From NCBI GenBank assembly GCA_038496445.1, contig JALMLS010000605.1, forward strand, positions 1 through 64,000: a stretch of DNA of 64,000 nt, given 5' to 3'. The position numbers were made by a program, and so were the translations under genes. The notes beneath the pieces were generated by a model that saw only the letters and a program-made list of their open reading frames with translations, did not search any database and had not been told where the DNA came from. This DNA is from Trichosphaerium sp. ATCC 40318 (taxonomy: Eukaryota > Protista > Tubulinea). Every line of letters starts with the position of its first letter. Positions within the stretch are counted from its first letter, which is position 1. Positions 1 through 40,031 of this stretch are shown here, in pieces.

Positions 1-483
1 ATTAGGCCATAATATCCTTAAGTAAGTGATATTGTAAAAAATATATTAAAGAGAAGCCAAAGGATGTGGGTATAAAAGCATTAACTTGCAAACAGTAGCA
101 GGAGTGGTATTAACAGGAGTTGGTTACAAAAATCTTGCTGTGTATTGTGGCAAGGCAGGATTGGCAAAAAAAGCAGGTAAAATGGCAAAAACATGAAGTT
201 GGTTGATATAAACTGGGTATCGTTTATGTGGGGATAGTTTTATGTAAAGTTTGTAATAATTGTACCAAACCTCTTTGTAATCGTTATGTGTTATGTATCG
301 TAATAAACTGTTATTTTCTTTTCCTTTATAAAGTGATGTTTTATGTGTGCCCAAAACGTGCAATATGCGTGGCAAATATGCATGCCCAAAATGTGCGATT
401 CGCGTTCTGTCCGATTCCACCTGTTAGTATATTGCAAGTGTCACCAATATTTTTGCTACAGTTTATTATTGAGTCAATTTAAA

Positions 484-529
484 GCAATAAATAAAAAGTT
501 ATTGCTGACCCTTCAGGGAAGGCATATGT

Positions 530-561
<32 letters not shown>

Positions 562-588
562 GGCTTCTGCGCAATAAATAAAAAGTTA
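484..588 (+). repeat. 18-bp direct repeat GCAATAAATAAAAAGTTA (probable target-site duplication) around the U6 fragment
   Basis: Identical copies at 484-501 and 571-588. Confidence 0.9.
502..574 (+). pseudogene. U6: 3'-truncated U6 snRNA retrocopy
   Basis: Contains AAAATTGGAACGATACAGAGAAGATTAGCATGGCTTCTGCGCAA, the conserved U6 ACAGAGA-box/AGC core. It is preceded by a CCCTTCAGGG 5' stem-loop, lacks the 3' part (GGATGACACGC...), and is flanked by an 18-bp direct repeat. Confidence 0.9.
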
Positions 589-599
589 AGCATAAAAAA

Positions 600-2929
600 C
601 TTGACTTACATTTTCAGTGATTTTTTTTGCATCAAACAACATGTACATGAACATTTTTGGACTCAGAGGGTAGCTTGGGTGGTTTTACTGTCAGGTGCAT
701 TATTTTCCATGACTGACTTTTGAGCATAACCTGTATTTTATGCAAACACATGGATATTCTGTCAACATTTTTCTGTAATCCTCAAAAAAAGTAAATAAAT
801 GACAACATGGCTTTGCTATGTACAATAAATCATGTTTTTAACACAGAACACAGACTCTGTTTTGTTGTTCCATAAGCCATTTGGTTTTTTTGCAATGGCC
901 CACAATCAGCTCATTTACCTCTCCACTGTTCTAAAAGTTAGTGTATATTGCTTATTTATGCACAAAATACCATTTTTAATACATAAAACTGAATTTAGAA
1001 GCATCTGAAATTTTTCCACCAGCTCATCAAATAATTCATCTGTGTGCACTCTTTTTATTTCACAAAATAAGAACTTGAGCACTTCAACACTAATAAACAT
1101 TAATTTAGGAAAAAAGAGAGATGACTGAGAAATCAAAAAAAAAGGTACACATACTGTTTTTCTTCACATTGCTCATACTCTGAGTATGTCTTAGGTATAC
1201 CCCTATGCACTTTCTGTTGTATTGTTTTTCAGTAATGAAATGTACATAAAAGCACTCCAAATCTTTTGCAGCATTTATGGTGGTTACATACTTGTCTGAC
1301 ATTACAATAGGTGCATAAGGTACACCATATTTTTCTTTCATCACATGTTTTGGCAATCACATACTATTATGATGAAAAAATACCATTACAACATTTCACA
1401 TAGAACAATTGCTAGAAAGTACATCAAACCAAACTAACCTGTTAATACTCATCTAATTGTGCTAATTAAAACACCATTACAAAATGTCATTGAAATACCC
1501 CAAAGCTTCACATCACTGTGAAAACCAAGGATGTATAAAAAAAACAGCTAGTTCCAAAATTGAGCCCAAACAAATATTCACTCCAAAGCCAAGTTCAAAG
1601 TGTAAGCACTATTCAATGGAAGAAAATGCTTCAAACAAGCACCAAAAAAAGTACAAAAAACCACATGTTTTTTGAATGTATTTGAAGTTTATTTAGGTTT
1701 TGCTAGACTCACTTTTCACACACTTTGAAACAGAACTCTACAAGATTCTTGGTACAGAAAATGCTCCAAAGTTATCTCACACCCATAGTGTTCCAAAGTG
1801 CTATCAAAATGGTGTACTTTAAAAAAACTCTCTTTTTTATCACTTATACACTCCTCCAAAAACATGATTATTAATTAACACCCCAAAAAATATCCCATAT
1901 TTTTGGTCTAGTGTAACTTTTGGGTTTTTGCATAAAGCATCAGCATTTTTCTGATAAAAAAGATAGTTGTTTGGCATGTGGATCAAGAGCAGCTGCATGC
2001 AAACTTGATATAGACACTTAATTATGTATTATTTGCCTTTTTTGTTGTTTAAATCTCTTTTGTAATTGAATTATTAATGTTTTAAAGCAATCTTTTGCAG
2101 TTGTGCTCTTAGAACAAGATAGAGCAACACTAAGTACTTTTACAAGTGACAAAGTAGGGTATGTGTCACTTAGAAAAAAAAATTAGTAACTCAATAAACA
2201 AATGTATTTATCTTCTAGCAACAGGCTGTAAAGCATCTTGTATGTAAATTATTTATATCACATGGTTGAAACAATTGTATTAAATAGTCAAGCACAGGTA
2301 TCTTTTCAGTCCATAAACAATCAAGCATTTCAAAACATGCCACTCTTGGCATAAGCAATGAAAAGATGTTTGATTGTTCATGTTTGTATACTGTTAAGGT
2401 ATATAGAAAAAGTACAATCTCAATACAACAAAACCCACTAAATGAAAAGGGTGGTCCACAATTAAACAGCATATAGCACTCTTAGTATTTTATCAATTTT
2501 AATAAAAACTAGCTCATTTTAACCACAGCACCTAAATACACTTATTTACATGGCGAAAGTAAATTACATGTGATACACAGGTGATCAAAACTATAACATT
2601 ACTTTGGAACTTTTTTTGTAATTATACATGTTGTATCACAAATAAATACAAGTTTGACACCTTGTAAATGCCTATTTTATGCCTGCATTACACCTGCATA
2701 CTGCTTGATTTATGACCAGCATTTGGAGGGTTAAATGCTTGGTTTATATCTGAAATAGTTGTGTACTGGATTCAGGCATCTAACAGGCATTTGATTAAAG
2801 AAAATGCCTGTTTTTGGCCAAATGCCTGGTTTATGCCAGTTTTTTCTTGGCATCTACCAGGCATTTGGCCTTTAAAACAGGCATTTAATAGGCATTTTCT
2901 TTCAAATACTGACTCCAGTTTTAGCCCTG
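600..2929. mobile_element. Decayed, CpG-depleted DNA-transposon-like block (possibly hAT)
   Basis: No intact gene and only one CpG in about 2.6 kb. A subterminal repeat cluster lies at 2660-2900 and ends in TTAGCCCTG (minus strand 5'-CAGGGCTAA). Family assignment is weak. Confidence 0.45.
2666..2897. repeat. Cluster of about 10 AAATGCCTG/CAGGCATTT motifs in both orientations (transposon subterminal repeats)
   Basis: Motif variants at approximately 2666, 2679, 2733, 2773, 2784, 2803, 2820, 2858, 2878 and 2889. Confidence 0.7.
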
Positions 2930-3000
2930 ATGTACAATGTGTCATTAAAACAAATTTAAAACATTGTTACAATTTGATTGAAAGTTTTTATTTTGAACAA

Positions 3001-4801
3001 TTACACCAGTATTGCAATGAAACATAGTACACCAAAGAAGGAAATATGTAGAACATCACCTGAACCACTTGTTGGAGTGTTTGTTGGTGTCACAGGGGTA
3101 ATACAATCTAAAAATGTTGTTACCAAACTTTTAAAAAGTACTCATTTTACCAGGTTGAGTTTGTGTTGAAATCACTATTGGAGGTATTTCACGAACAGCA
3201 GAGTCTACTTGTACACCAATGACACATTGTGCAAGGCGGCTACCTATAAGTAGGCATTAATAAAATATAAAATGTAGTAATACTACAAACCTGCATTGCC
3301 AGTGCTTTGTGTACAACCATCATCTGTGCCACTATGTATTATCATACCACGTCCCACAACTACAGCATAGGTGGACAAGCCAGCAGGTACAGCAATTTCT
3401 TGTTTATACCATGCTACCATACTTGTAAGAGATAGGTAACAGCGCTCAATATGTACTTATGTTTGTGAAATCATCAAAATCTTGTACATTGCCAAGATCA
3501 CCAACATGACGTGCAGCTGTTGGCAGTCGCGCATGAATAACATTGAGCGGGTTGTAATGGCCTATAAAATACATAAGTGTCACTGTATTTTATTGACAGC
3601 TACTTACTCAGGGTGCTTGTGCCATCTAGGCCAGACACATCACCCAGTTCGTGGATATGAAAGCCATGTGCTTGACCTGAAAGGCCAGTAATTTTGGCTG
3701 ATATGGTGACTGTGGTTGCGGTCACTAAACAAACTAGTTAAACATCCAATGACAGACTAAGTAGCATTACCATCAAACCACACAGTTCCTCCAACGTCAT
3801 TGCCAGATGTAGGAGCAAAAACGCATACAGCTTTAGTGAAATTTGGTATATTTTCTACGTGATAAAAATAAATTACCAAAAAGAGTCAGTAAAAAATAGT
3901 ACTGTACCTGCAGTTGCATTACCACTTTTAATGCCAACAACACCCATAGCAAGCCTACTGCCTGCAAACCCTGAGGCGCCAGTGCACAAGTCAGTCTAAA
4001 AAACAAGTGGAGTTAGCAACCAAGCATCACCAAATATGTTAATACACACCCCCGCATGTAAAATGATACCGCGACCAATGATGGAGTTCGAGCCAACAAG
4101 ATCAAGCAACTCTAATTCCTTAACTTGGTTGATAGACCCTCCTGCAACGTTCCAGCTGCCCTAACACAATGGTGTAAAGTGTAGTGAAGAACAGGGGTAA
4201 GCATACCATGTCACCCACATGCCTTGGCGTATCCGAAGGACATGAGTGTGTTGCGTTGGTAGGGTTGTAGTGACCACCTGTAGCGCTACCAGTAGTATCG
4301 GTGATGTCTCCATACTACAATGTGTGTAAGTTTAATGAACGAGATCCGAAGAGAGAAAACCGATGCCGAAGTCATACTCCTCCCCAACTTTGGGCGTGTT
4401 ACTAGCCCATATCCCTTATGATACAAAGTGTCCTAATACCGATGTTGCCCGTATCGCCTATGACTCGACACAACTGTGGAAGTGGGTGGGTACCTGGTGT
4501 ACGTGCATGCCAATAGATGCGTTGGTATTTGCCGTTATGCCCGAAATATCAACTGATACGCGTACTTTCGATGCTGTCAAGTTGTCAACCACGAAAACGC
4601 CCAAAAGTAACGTACCAGTTATTTGTTCAAAGAGAACAGTTCCAGAAATACCAGAATCGAGTGTAGTACCTTGTAGCACCGCAATTGCGTCTACTTACGT
4701 GTTAGGTCTTGTATACGAGCCTAAAAATACGTACTTTGGCATTGGGAAACCACTACGAATAGCGCAAGCAAAGAGTATACAACATGTTGAATGTGAGCCA
4801 T
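3001..4801 (-). CDS. Secreted, probably GPI-anchored Cu/Zn superoxide dismutase with two tandem SOD domains (multi-exon)
   Basis: Signal peptide MAHIQHVVYSLLALFVVVSQC. Domain 1: GMHVHQ..GGHYNP..HSCP..RHVGDM..SIIGRGIILHAG..GSRLA. Domain 2: HGFHIHE..HYNP..RHVGDLGN..VGRGMIIHSG..SRLAQCVIG. Then an S/T/P stalk and hydrophobic C-terminus LHISFFGVLCFIAILV*. Confidence 0.9.
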
Positions 4802-37927: not shown

Positions 37928-38004
37928 TTTATTTTTTTTGATTTTTTTTACAAGTTTTTCTGACTGTCAAAGAATTTTTTTGTACAACGGCAAAATTGGT
38001 GTAA

Positions 38005-40031
38005 TTAAACAGCACCCAACGCGTTCATGTCAGACATAAATTTGGCGTAGCTATCTCCAGAGGCAGCAGGTGCTTCCGTTTTTTCTTCGGCAGAGGCAGC
38101 AGGTGCGGCAGGCCTAGCATAAAAGTTATAAAATGGCTCACGTTGCAACCACAAATGTGCGTACTTTGGTCTTGGTTTCAATTTTTTAACAGGTTTTGGC
38201 CTCGCTCGTTTTACGCGTACAGAAACAGGTACCATTGCTGTCACGTCAGCACTAACTGGCCGTGACGGTCCTATTGCAAAGGAGTAAGCGTTGTATTTGC
38301 CAACGGTAATGGACGTACCAACTGAAGGGCGTGTCCGCAGACCAGGATTCGCTGTTGGTATTTGCGTTGGATGAGGCATACCACGCGGTGGCGCCATGCC
38401 ATGTCCAGGTGGCCCATGCTGTGGTGGGGGATACCTATTCATCGATTAGACACGTCTTGTCAAAGTATGGCGTACCCATTGCCAGGTCCGTAGTGAGGTG
38501 GTCTAAAGTGTGGTGGGGGTGGACCTCGTGGACCTCCTTGCATCATGGGTGGTGGCATTTTTGGGTACCCCATCGGTGGCATACCCATGCCCGGTTGCAT
38601 TGGAGGAGCCATGCCTGGGTGTGGCATACGAGGCGGCATGCCTTGGTGAGGAGGACCTCGAGGCATTGGAGGGTGTGATCGCGGCGGAGGAGGTAAACCT
38701 TGAGGGCCAGAGCGCATGTTAGGAGGCATGCCGGGTGGGACCATGCCAGGAGGACGCATTTTAGGCATGTTGTTGGGCGGTAGCTTGCCGTAATTTCTCG
38801 GTGGGGGTGGTAGCCCTGGAGGTGGCGCCATTCCAGGAGGTGGTTGCATGCCGGGTGGCGGCTGCATACCGGGCGGCGGTTGCATACCAGGCGGTGGCTG
38901 CATGCCAGGAGGCGGTGCCATTCCAGGCGGTGGTTGCATGCCAGGAGGTGGTGCCATTCCAGGTGGCGGTTGCATACCAGGTGGTGGCTGCATGCCAGAT
39001 GGCGGTTGCATACCAGGTGGTGGCTGCATGCCAGGTGGTGGAGGTATACCAGGTGGCGGTTGCATACCAGGCCTATGTATTATAGGCGCTGGTGTCTTTG
39101 GAGGTGGAGGCGGCGGAACTTTTTCAGACGAGGCACCAGGCGCAGGACCTGCCGGAGGCGGTGGGGCAATTGAACCTGGAGGAGCACCTGTAAGACAAAT
39201 CAGTGTTAATTGAATATTTTAACAGGCGAGCTTACCAGCTGGAGGAGGAGGTAGTGATGAATTTGGTGGTGCACCAGTGGGAGGTGGTGGCAAACCCTTA
39301 AATAACATTAAGCGAACTTCACAATAATTTATACTTACATTTGGCATTCTATTTGGTCGTGCTGCACCCTGTGGATAGCCACCTAAAAAACATTTAGTAA
39401 TTTTAAATTGGTATGTGTGTATACCTGGAGGTGCAACGTGCATGCCATTGTGCATGACAGGAGGAGGCATGCCTCCTCCACGCTGACGAGGATCACGCTT
39501 TATTTTAATGCCAACCAAAGGATCTCTGGCTCTGATGTTGGCTGACACACGTGGGTTTTTTCGTGCCCTAAAAAGAAATGACTTTTATGAATAAAAGAAA
39601 AAAAGCTGTTAAAATCGCGATCGATAATTTTAACGTTGTTTTAACGATTTTAAGGCGGTTCGTACGATTGGTAATGCTCTGCGAGGTTTGGGTTCGATTC
39701 AAGCTTTGTCAATGCTAATTCTATGGTACGACGCCTATTCCTGCCCTTGTGATCAAGGTTACCATAATTTTCTTGGCGTCTGAGCTCTCCGAGTGCTTTT
39801 TGTAATTCAGTTGGGTCCTTTCGCTCCAATATTTTTGTTCTTAGCTTGTCTCGGTTTCTTTTGTTCTATAGACGCATTAGATATTCATAGTTTTTTAAAA
39901 ATTGTTATTTTCACCCACAGCAATGTTTTATAGCGTATATGTACCTTTTTTAACTCCTTTTTTCTCTGTGCTTTGCGATGCGCATCTGTTGGGTTTAGGT
40001 TACGCCCCGACTTAGTAGTACGTCTCCCCAT
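38005..40031 (-). CDS. WBP11: WW-domain-binding protein 11 (splicing factor)
   Basis: [29 protein letters not shown]-terminus; long Pro-rich centre; C-terminal VPVSVRVKR and [15 protein letters not shown]. Confidence 0.9.
38814..39065 (-). repeat. Coding 18-nt minisatellite, 14 x M(Q/A)PPPG-type units
   Basis: Direct translation of the 38460-39065 ORF. Confidence 0.95.

What the first reader, a model, noticed from the sequence alone, without database searches (positions are those of the whole stretch)
572..3191. Sharply bounded CpG-free domain in a CpG-rich genome: footprint of targeted 5mC silencing
Seen: I find one CpG (2554-2555) in about 2,620 bp, with many TG and CA dinucleotides. From about 3190 onward CpG is abundant (ACGT, CGCG, GTACG donors). 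The block coincides with decayed transposon-like DNA and reaches into the last exons of the SOD gene. Established: 5mC deamination turns CpG into TpG/CpA. Inference: this organism methylates repeats but not genes, long enough to erase CpG from them, and the mark spreads about 200-250 bp into the neighbouring gene.
Basis: partly seen in the sequence, partly recalled or inferred. Interest (0 to 1): 0.75.

Follow-up and report, generated by a model that had tools for sequence, protein, structure and literature searches.

The report
CpG-erased repeat island in amoeba
The first 3.2 kb of this contig from the marine amoeba Trichosphaerium is an old landing patch for mobile elements that has lost nearly all its CpG sites through C-to-T decay; this is the usual scar of long-term DNA methylation and matches what has been measured directly in another amoeba.

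Summary
Window 572-3191 has one CpG (2554), observed/expected 0.02 against 0.88 for the window. For 589-3191, 57 CpGs are expected (P about 6e-24). GpC is normal, and the TpG/CpA surplus is about the size of the CpG deficit.

The genome is Trichosphaerium sp. (Amoebozoa), identified by an exact match of scaffold length to the published assembly.

Three inserted elements inside the block show the decay happening in place:
- A truncated 790-bp TIR element kept 1 of 10 ancestral CpGs; the others are now TG, CA, TA or TT.
- A U6 retrocopy lost 2 of 4 CpGs.
- Copies of a young repeat differ mostly by CpG transitions.

The genome encodes a DNMT1-type methylase, a second C5 methylase, and SRA and MBD proteins. 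RIP indices are negative.

- The "sharp" left edge at 572 comes from two young CpG-bearing inserts. The domain runs to the contig start.
- About 1.9 kb of the domain is single-copy DNA.
- The right edge is graded. CpG is absent from the last 190 bp of an intact tandem Cu/Zn-SOD gene and halved for a further 800 bp.

This is sparse repressive CpG methylation of the Acanthamoeba type, new for this species and inferred, not measured. The scan noted the same footprint on other DNA of this genome (s1-390540, s1-378655, s1-406747).

The parts
1..151 (.). CpG-free single-copy DNA at the contig start; the left part of the same depleted domain
   Evidence: No CpG before 221. No other copy in the genome: the search with 1-500 matches elsewhere only from about 145-152 onward. 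The window is G000:C144:1-64000, so the domain abuts the contig end.
152..421 (+). Young high-copy repeat, with an internal deletion relative to other copies. It carries 9 of the 11 CpGs that made the left flank look CpG-rich.
   Evidence: At least 40 copies at 87-98% identity. In the alignment A2, 15 of 23 variable columns are CpG-context transitions.
483..588 (+). 3'-truncated U6 snRNA retrocopy (about 501-570) between perfect 18-bp direct repeats (484-501 and 571-588); a young insert in the domain
   Evidence: Rfam U6 at 65.6 bits. Direct repeat D5. Alignment to genuine U6 genes shows 4 differences in the copied part, all C>T or G>A, two of them at CpG.
589..2318 (.). Single-copy, non-coding, completely CpG-free DNA of unknown origin (possibly very old element remains)
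   Evidence: 0 CpG in 1730 bp. The only genome match is itself. No Pfam hit in any ORF.
2319..2929 (+). 5'-truncated copy (lacking about 145 bp and the 5' TIR) of a non-autonomous element of about 790 bp with 25-bp terminal inverted repeats beginning CAGGGCTAAAACTGG and subterminal AAATGCC-type repeats
   Evidence: About 15 copies at 75-85% identity. Full-length extent and TIRs come from other copies. In alignment A1, 9 of 10 ancestral CpGs are lost here.
2554..2555 (.). The only surviving CpG of the block; it is an ancestral CpG of the TIR element
   Evidence: Alignment A1 columns 294/295: CG in 6 copies and CA in 5.
3001..4799 (-). Intact gene of about 12 exons for a secreted protein with two tandem Cu/Zn-SOD domains, a Thr/Pro-rich linker and a hydrophobic, GPI-signal-like C-terminus
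   Evidence: Pfam Sod_Cu hits on four exons. The three-frame reading with GT..AG introns stays in frame from the ATG at 4799 to the TAA at 3001.
3001..3243 (-). Last two exons (about 3243-3150 and 3106-3001) and the intron between them. They lie in or at the edge of the CpG-free zone and hold only 2 CpGs (3192, 3237).
   Evidence: The reading frame is continuous across the composition change, which argues against a chimeric join.
3192..4000 (.). Zone of partial CpG depletion inside the SOD gene (o/e 0.34-0.44, TpG/CpA o/e about 1.5-1.6); full recovery by about 4400
   Evidence: 13 CpGs observed in 3201-4000 against about 29 expected, with both 400-bp bins at or below the 1st percentile of the window background.

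Best explanation
Window 1-3191 is one heterochromatin-like island at the end of a Trichosphaerium contig. Over time it received at least three insertions: a TIR element fragment, a U6 retrocopy and a young high-copy repeat. The island has been CpG-methylated in the cell lineage for a long time, most likely maintained by the genome's DNMT1-type enzyme together with an SRA-domain (UHRF1-like) reader. Spontaneous deamination of 5-methylcytosine turned CpG into TpG or CpA on both strands until essentially none remained. Only recent inserts still carry CpG, and they are already decaying. Methylation has also reached the 3' end of the neighbouring SOD gene, more weakly or only at times, and removed about half of its CpGs over about 1 kb without breaking the reading frame. 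Shown: the CpG deficit, the matching TpG/CpA surplus, CpG-to-TpG/CpA replacement at dated ancestral sites, and the presence of the enzymes. Inferred: that 5mC is the cause, that it is still present today, and that the island is transcriptionally silent.
For: The depletion is extreme and specific to CpG: o/e 0.02, with GpC at 1.27 and CAG/CTG not depleted, P = 6e-24 after GC correction. The TpG+CpA surplus over the background o/e is about 88 dinucleotides, against a CpG deficit of about 57 at present GC. In the TIR-element alignment, 10 ancestral CpGs are all kept by the youngest copies, but the window copy has TG x2, CA x4, TA x2, TT x1 and CG x1. The preceding bases are A, A, A, G, A, T, C, G, G, T, so there is no trinucleotide restriction. 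TG and CA outcomes are balanced overall, 24 to 21. Transitions per site are 26% at CpG, 7.6% at other C/G and 1.9% at A/T. CpG loss rises from 0-10% in copies with 2-3% non-CpG divergence to 90-100% at about 9%. The U6 retrocopy lost 2 of 4 CpGs, and its only other changes are two C>T. In the young repeat, 15 of 23 variable columns are CpG transitions. Other copies of the TIR element also lie in multi-kb CpG-poor islands with CpG-normal flanks. On the machinery side, the DNMT1-like gene on C7 has motifs I, IV (PCQGFS), VI (ENV), VIII, IX and X, a BAH-like exon, and a target-recognition exon that matches solved DNMT1 structures at 2e-17. There are also SRA genes (1e-21), MBD hits and a second C5 methylase. 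The same pattern of sparse CpG methylation on TEs and silent regions without gene-body methylation was measured by EM-seq in the amoebozoan Acanthamoeba castellanii (PMC12344493).
Against: There is no direct methylation measurement for this organism, and no paper in the searched library links Trichosphaerium with methylation. Two thirds of the block (589-2318) has no detectable repeat relative, so 'repeat-targeted' is not shown for it. The youngest TIR-element copies have lost fewer CpGs than a constant 10-fold CpG rate would predict, which may reflect consensus bias or delayed methylation. Non-CpG C>T is also about 4 times the A/T transition rate, so part of the AT-richness has another cause. 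The statement that genes are generally unmethylated therefore rests on a small sample.
Confidence: 0.8

Rival explanations
1. A repeat-triggered or deaminase-driven hypermutation process (RIP-like or APOBEC-like) mutated C to T in duplicated DNA in bursts, without long-term maintained methylation.
For: Differences between repeat copies are dominated by C>T/G>A. The genome has a second, unclassified C5-methylase-like gene that could in principle act like fungal RID.
Against: The RIP indices point the wrong way: TpA/ApT is 0.89 against a background of 0.96, and (CpA+TpG)/(ApC+GpT) is 1.34 against 1.12. The changes hit CpG in every flanking context rather than CpA or TCG. Single-copy DNA at 589-2318 and part of a single-copy gene are depleted as well. 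Loss scales smoothly with copy age rather than appearing as a burst, and the youngest near-identical copies keep all their CpGs.
Confidence: 0.06
2. The single-copy core (589-2318) is foreign or compositionally distinct DNA, for example an old viral or laterally acquired fragment that was CpG-poor on arrival. Only the inserted elements decayed in place.
For: The core has no relatives in the genome and no recognisable genes. The published genome paper reports heavy gene traffic from giant viruses (PMC10521059).
Against: Zero CpG in 1730 bp against about 38 expected, with a TpG/CpA surplus identical to that of the adjacent element that demonstrably decayed in place. The depletion continues seamlessly through elements of different ages and into a host gene. 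The two ideas are also compatible, because foreign DNA is exactly what such methylation targets in Acanthamoeba.
Confidence: 0.08
3. The composition change near 3000-3200 is an assembly chimera or a contaminant join.
For: The block lies at the very start of a contig, where assemblies are weakest.
Against: The SOD reading frame and its GT..AG introns run uninterrupted across 3001-3243 into the CpG-normal part. The transition is a gradient over about 1 kb rather than a step. The element families in the block occur throughout this same genome.
Confidence: 0.02

Closest known systems
Hypermethylated regions of Acanthamoeba castellanii (Sarre et al. 2025, Mol Biol Evol, PMC12344493)
   Same: An amoebozoan with a DNMT1 orthologue. 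Methylation is CpG-only and sparse (1.3% of CpGs, 3.4% of the genome), concentrated on TEs, intergenic DNA and silent genes, with no gene-body methylation. Here, rare CpG-erased islands sit in an otherwise CpG-normal genome together with a DNMT1-type gene.
   Different: There, methylation was measured by EM-seq, WGBS and nanopore; here only its mutational scar is seen. Acanthamoeba also has DNMT3, whereas I found no DNMT3-type signal, only a second unclassified PCQ-type methylase. In Acanthamoeba, DNA transposons were not generally enriched, whereas here a TIR element family marks the islands.
CpG decay of methylated repeats in vertebrates and TE-restricted methylation in fungi and diatoms (established knowledge; cited in PMC12344493)
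   Same: The mechanism is the same: 5mC deamination gives CpG>TpG/CpA at roughly ten times the rate of other transitions, in proportion to element age. In the window copy, about 11-fold per C site.
   Different: The lineage differs. Here the background genome is not CpG-depleted at all, so the islands stand out as a near-binary signal.
Repeat-induced point mutation (RIP) of Neurospora and RIP-like TCG mutation in Pucciniomycotina (my own knowledge of the literature)
   Same: C>T transitions accumulate in repeated DNA and can leak into neighbouring single-copy sequence.
   Different: The dinucleotide signature does not fit: no TpA gain, no CpA loss, no TCG restriction. Single-copy DNA is affected, and the loss is clock-like.
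Hypermethylated repeat compartments of Physarum polycephalum (my own recollection of 1980s-90s work; not retrieved in the library)
   Same: An amoebozoan in which 5mC is concentrated in clustered, nested transposon DNA.
   Different: I could not verify this here. Those compartments are tens of kb long and dominated by an LTR element.

Membership tests
5mC-deamination footprint (historically methylated domain) | CpG strongly under-represented after correction for local base composition, while the control dinucleotide GpC is not | tested here: met
   CpG o/e 0.02 and GpC o/e 1.27. One CpG observed against 57.5 expected, P = 6e-24.
5mC-deamination footprint (historically methylated domain) | Matching surplus of the deamination products TpG and CpA | tested here: met
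   TpG o/e 1.49 and CpA 1.55 against 1.21/1.22 in the window. The surplus of about 88 is of the same order as the CpG deficit.
5mC-deamination footprint (historically methylated domain) | At sites that are CpG in related copies, this copy has TpG or CpA, at a rate well above other transitions | tested here: met
   9 of 10 ancestral CpGs are lost in the window copy. Transitions are 26% at CpG, 7.6% at non-CpG C/G and 1.9% at A/T. The same bias appears in the U6 retrocopy and the young repeat.
5mC-deamination footprint (historically methylated domain) | The genome encodes a DNA cytosine-5 methyltransferase able to maintain CpG methylation | tested here: met
   A DNMT1-like gene on C7 with all catalytic motifs, and a target-recognition exon that matches solved DNMT1 at 2e-17.
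5mC-deamination footprint (historically methylated domain) | 5-methylcytosine is actually present on the domain | not testable with these tools
   No read-level or bisulfite/EM-seq data are available. ONT and PacBio reads exist under PRJNA826761 according to PMC10521059.
DNMT1 family (gene at G000:C7, about 645200-649750, minus strand) | C5-methylase catalytic motifs, including the PCQ catalytic loop and ENV | tested here: met
   Exon translations show motifs I, IV, VI, VIII, IX and X. PF00145 hits over the cut-off.
DNMT1 family (gene at G000:C7, about 645200-649750, minus strand) | DNMT1-type target recognition domain | tested here: met
   All 23 PDB hits of this exon are DNMT1 chains, with a best E-value of 1.8e-17.
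DNMT1 family (gene at G000:C7, about 645200-649750, minus strand) | BAH domains N-terminal to the methylase | tested here: inconclusive
   One upstream exon hits BAH at E = 6e-5 but scores 23.3 bits, below the 30.8-bit cut-off. Exons were scanned separately.
DNMT1 family (gene at G000:C7, about 645200-649750, minus strand) | Replication-foci targeting domain (RFD) | tested here: inconclusive
   The only RFD hits are weak (23.7 bits) and lie on other contigs, C28 and C340. The 5' end of the C7 gene beyond the fetched 10 kb was not read.
Repeat-induced point mutation (RIP) | High TpA/ApT and low (CpA+TpG)/(ApC+GpT) relative to the rest of the genome | tested here: not met
   TpA/ApT is 0.89 against 0.96, and (CpA+TpG)/(ApC+GpT) is 1.34 against 1.12, both opposite to RIP.
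Repeat-induced point mutation (RIP) | Confined to duplicated sequence and its immediate edge | tested here: not met
   1730 bp of single-copy DNA is fully depleted.
hAT-like non-autonomous TIR element (repeat at 2319-2929) | Terminal inverted repeats at both ends of full copies | tested here: met
   A 25-bp TIR starting CAGGG is seen at the 5' end in L002, L006 and L003, and as its complement at the 3' end in L004, L006 and the window.
hAT-like non-autonomous TIR element (repeat at 2319-2929) | 8-bp target-site duplication and a related transposase-bearing master copy | tested here: inconclusive
   The flanks of L004 and L006 show no clear duplication. I did not search for an autonomous copy. 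The superfamily assignment is therefore only a resemblance.
UHRF1/VIM-type maintenance cofactor (gene on C547, C91 and C615) | SRA domain together with PHD and RING fingers | tested here: inconclusive
   The SRA domain is clear (E = 1e-21). PHD-like and RING-like cysteine patterns are visible in neighbouring exons but gave no Pfam hit when the exons were scanned separately.

The most novel reading that the evidence does not exclude
Methylation in this amoeba may be laid down by domain rather than by repeat sequence. In this reading, an island seeded by element insertions covers about 1.9 kb of single-copy DNA and leaks about 1 kb into an intact, secreted tandem-SOD gene, whereas other island edges are abrupt. 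That would make this locus a natural case of heterochromatin spreading (a position effect) onto a host gene in Amoebozoa. It might also bear on the ten-fold over-represented CACGTG word of this genome, which is absent from the island while its decay products are enriched there; the word could mark or protect unmethylated DNA.
Probability: 0.25. Interest if true: 0.5.

Novelty: new member of a known kind. Interest (0 to 1): 0.3.

Why it matters
It gives sequence-level evidence that Trichosphaerium, a tubulinean amoeba whose genome paper does not mention methylation, has functional CpG methylation aimed at mobile-element islands and uses a DNMT1-type enzyme. That adds a second amoebozoan lineage to the Acanthamoeba result and supports the view that repressive, TE-directed 5mC without gene-body methylation is ancestral. 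In practice, CpG-free blocks can serve as a free annotation layer for silent or parasitic DNA in this assembly and help explain why contigs break there. It does not reveal a new mechanism.

Tried and rejected
**Identifying the organism**
- An exact-product lookup of a window ORF found nothing.
- A protein-atlas query gave only ambiguous diatom and nematode BTB clusters.
- A paper search for '642 contigs' was irrelevant.
I checked this against the published longest-scaffold length, 1,255,013 bp, which equals the length of G000:C1.

**Origin of 589-2318**
- A genome DNA search at E <= 1 found only the region itself.
- Pfam at E <= 1 on ten ORFs found nothing.
- The origin stays unknown.

**Classifying the second methylase (C59)**
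- PDB searches of two exons found nothing.
- A search for ADD_DNMT3 was empty, but it was also empty in all the control genomes, so it is uninformative.

**Genome-wide CpG profile**
- This was not possible.
- The one other CpG gap in the sample, 418 bp in L054, is single-copy, sits in ordinary AT-rich DNA, and is not convincing as an island.

**Rejected explanations**
- RIP and CHG-context methylation.
- A chimeric join.
- Local GC content as the cause.

- I did not use the big protein searches, because no claim here rests on them.
Full report
**1. The observation**

In window 572-3191 there is exactly one CpG, at 2554. The flanking CpGs are at 570 and 3192.

| Measure | 572-3191 | Whole window |
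|---|---|---|
| CpG o/e | 0.02 | 0.88 |
| GC | 31.7% | 41% |
| TpG o/e | 1.49 | 1.21 |
| CpA o/e | 1.55 | 1.22 |
| GpC o/e (control) | 1.27 | 1.19 |

- The two CpG-free gaps, 1984 and 638 bp, compare with a next-longest gap of 221 bp in 64 kb.
- With expectation scaled to local C and G content and to the background o/e, 589-3191 should hold 57.5 CpGs and holds 1 (P = 6e-24).
- Local GC content therefore does not explain the deficit.
- The TpG+CpA surplus over background is about 88 dinucleotides, the same order as the deficit.

**2. The organism**

- The window is the first 64 kb of contig C144 of a 70.28-Mb assembly of 642 contigs.
- Contig C1 is 1,255,013 bp long.
- That is exactly the longest scaffold in Table 1 of the Trichosphaerium sp. 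genome paper, which reports 70.87 Mb, 710 scaffolds and short introns (PMC10521059).
- I therefore take the genome to be Trichosphaerium sp., a marine tubulinean amoeba.
- That paper never uses the word 'methyl'.
- No paper in the searched library links Trichosphaerium with methylation.

**3. Anatomy of the block**

The domain is larger and more composite than described.

| Coordinates | Content | Evidence |
|---|---|---|
| 1-151 | CpG-free, single-copy | |
| 152-421 | Young repeat, at least 40 copies at 87-98% identity; carries nine CpGs | |
| 484-501 and 571-588 | Perfect 18-bp direct repeats around a 3'-truncated U6 retrocopy, which carries two CpGs | |
| 589-2318 | Single-copy in the genome, no recognisable coding remnant, no CpG | |
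| 2319-2929 | 5'-truncated copy of an element of about 790 bp with 25-bp terminal inverted repeats (starting CAGGG) and subterminal short repeats | |
| 3001-4799, minus strand | Intact gene of about 12 exons: signal peptide, two Cu/Zn-SOD domains, Thr/Pro-rich linker, hydrophobic C-terminus resembling a GPI signal | |

- All 11 CpGs to the left of 572 belong to the two young insertions.
- The 'sharp left edge' is therefore an insertion artefact, and the depleted domain runs to the contig end.
- The SOD reading frame and its introns continue without a break across the composition change. This rules out a chimeric join for practical purposes.

**4. Decay in place**

I aligned eleven copies of the TIR element (A1).

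- Ten sites are CpG in at least two copies.
- The youngest copies keep all ten.
- The window copy has TG twice, CA four times, TA twice, TT once and CG once.
- The surviving CG is the lone CpG at 2554.
- The base before the CpG is A, G, C or T, so there is no trinucleotide restriction.
- TG and CA outcomes are balanced, 24 to 21, as expected for symmetric methylation.

Transitions per site across the copies:

| Site class | Transitions per site |
|---|---|
| CpG | 26% |
| Other C/G | 7.6% |
| A/T | 1.9% |

- For the window copy, the per-cytosine rate at CpG is about 11 times that at other C/G.
- CpG loss rises with non-CpG divergence, from 0-10% at 2-3% divergence to 90-100% at about 9%.
- This is clock-like and not a burst.

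Two further internal clocks agree.

- The U6 retrocopy differs from genuine U6 genes at four positions in the copied part. All four are C>T or G>A, two are at CpG, and it has lost two of its four CpGs.
- In the young repeat, 15 of 23 variable columns are CpG-context transitions.

**5. Specificity**

| Index | Block | Background |
|---|---|---|
| TpA/ApT | 0.89 | 0.96 |
| (CpA+TpG)/(ApC+GpT) | 1.34 | 1.12 |

- Both indices point away from RIP.
- CAG and CTG are not depleted, so there is no sign of CHG-context decay.

**6. Machinery**

- **DNMT1-like gene on C7:** it shows methylase motifs I, IV (PCQGFS), VI (ENV), VIII, IX and X, and PF00145 hits over the cut-off.
- **Its target-recognition exon:** all 23 of its PDB hits are DNMT1, with a best E-value of 1.8e-17.
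- **Its upstream exons:** one has a sub-threshold BAH hit.
- **RFD domain:** none was found next to the gene; there are only weak hits on other contigs.
- **Second methylase on C59:** a PCQ-type enzyme that remains unclassified.
- **SRA genes:** hits at E = 1e-21, one with PHD-like and RING-like cysteine patterns that I saw by eye only.
- **MBD:** hits are present.

**7. The pattern elsewhere in the genome**

- Other copies of the TIR element lie in multi-kb CpG-poor islands with CpG-normal flanks.
- Young copies sit as CpG-bearing inserts inside older CpG-free DNA, for example in L002.
- The young repeat and the TIR element co-occur on several contigs: C81, C17, C137, C97 and C461. The islands therefore look like nests of insertions.
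- In 120 kb of random samples there is no multi-kb CpG-free block, and 500-bp windows are unimodal around 0.8-0.9.
- Such islands therefore look like a small part of the genome, though 120 kb from the middle of large contigs is too small and too biased a sample to put a figure on it. The sampled gene-rich DNA shows no sign of historical methylation.

**8. The gene side**

- CpG is absent from the last 190 bp of the SOD gene.
- In 3201-3600 and 3601-4000, o/e is 0.44 and 0.34, at or below the 1st percentile of 400-bp bins in the rest of the window.
- It recovers to 0.69 and then 1.12 further in.
- TpG and CpA stay elevated across this zone.
- At six clear outer edges of other islands, o/e is about 1 within the first 250 bp. 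The graded 1-kb zone here is therefore the exception.
- I read it as weaker or intermittent spreading into the 3' half of the gene. Expression data are needed to say more.

**9. Comparison with what is known**

- The closest measured system is Acanthamoeba castellanii.
- There, methylation is CpG-only and covers 1.3% of CpGs, with hypermethylated regions making up 3.4% of the genome.
- It falls on TEs, intergenic DNA and silent or virus-derived genes, alongside H3K9 methylation, with no gene-body methylation, and DNMT1 plus DNMT3 are present (PMC12344493).
- The Trichosphaerium footprint fits that picture.
- It differs in three ways: it is only inferred, I found no DNMT3-type signal, and a TIR element family marks the islands.
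- I rate it a new member of a known kind.

**10. Earlier notes of this scan**

- The same genome has been flagged for CpG decay in repeats on other contigs (s1-378655, s1-406747).
- One follow-up reached the same reading, slow CpG decay in an amoeba with a DNMT1-type methylase (s1-390540).
- My evidence is independent of theirs.

**11. Verdict**

- Confidence in the 5mC-decay explanation is 0.8.
- Interest is 0.3.

Noticed in passing
window 483-588: A U6 snRNA retrocopy holding only the first 70 or so nt of U6, flanked by perfect 18-bp direct repeats, with no A-tail. Rfam scores it as full-length (65.6 bits), but the 3' third is unrelated sequence. The genome has at least 11 genuine U6 genes at about 105 bits and several weaker copies.
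   Followed up: partly
window 152-421; copies e.g. L018:1019-1496, L011:473-868: A young repeat family with at least 40 copies. Its 3' part is a tandem array of about 12-bp CCCAAAACGTG-like units. The window copy lacks most of this array. The family co-occurs with the TIR element on at least five contigs, so the two share insertion islands.
   Followed up: partly
window 6001-64000 versus 589-3191: CACGTG occurs 45 times in 58 kb (0.78 per kb) outside the block and never inside it. Its deamination products CATGTG and CACATG occur at 2.3 per kb inside against 0.5 per kb outside. Outside the block, CCG and CGG are at o/e 0.5-0.6 although overall CpG is 0.88, so CpG in this genome is concentrated in particular words.
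   Followed up: partly
window 3001-4799 (minus strand): The gene encodes two Cu/Zn-SOD domains in tandem behind a signal peptide and ends in a Thr/Pro-rich linker plus a hydrophobic tail, which looks like a GPI-anchored extracellular SOD. Donor sites in the CpG-normal 5' half are often GTACGT. In the depleted 3' half they read GTACAT, GTACAG or GTAAGT, which could be decayed GTACGT.
   Followed up: partly
G000:C59, about 70700-73100 (L044, minus strand): A second C5 cytosine methylase gene with motif I (GAGG) and motif IV (PCQGFS) but no match to any solved structure. One upstream exon has a weak SPOC-like hit. It could be a DNMT1 paralogue or an orphan methylase.
   Followed up: partly
G000:C547:1-2827, C91:166222-169338, C615:1259-4375 (L037, L039, L040): Near-identical copies of an SRA-domain gene appear on three contigs, with PHD-like and RING-like cysteine motifs in neighbouring exons. 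These are either alleles or assembly duplicates of a UHRF1-like gene, or a small family.
   Followed up: partly
window 38001-39500: A 1.5-kb stretch with GC up to 62%, against 41% for the window, with CpG o/e only 0.54-0.68 and CpA o/e up to 2.1. It overlaps a 201-aa ORF with no Pfam hit.
   Followed up: no
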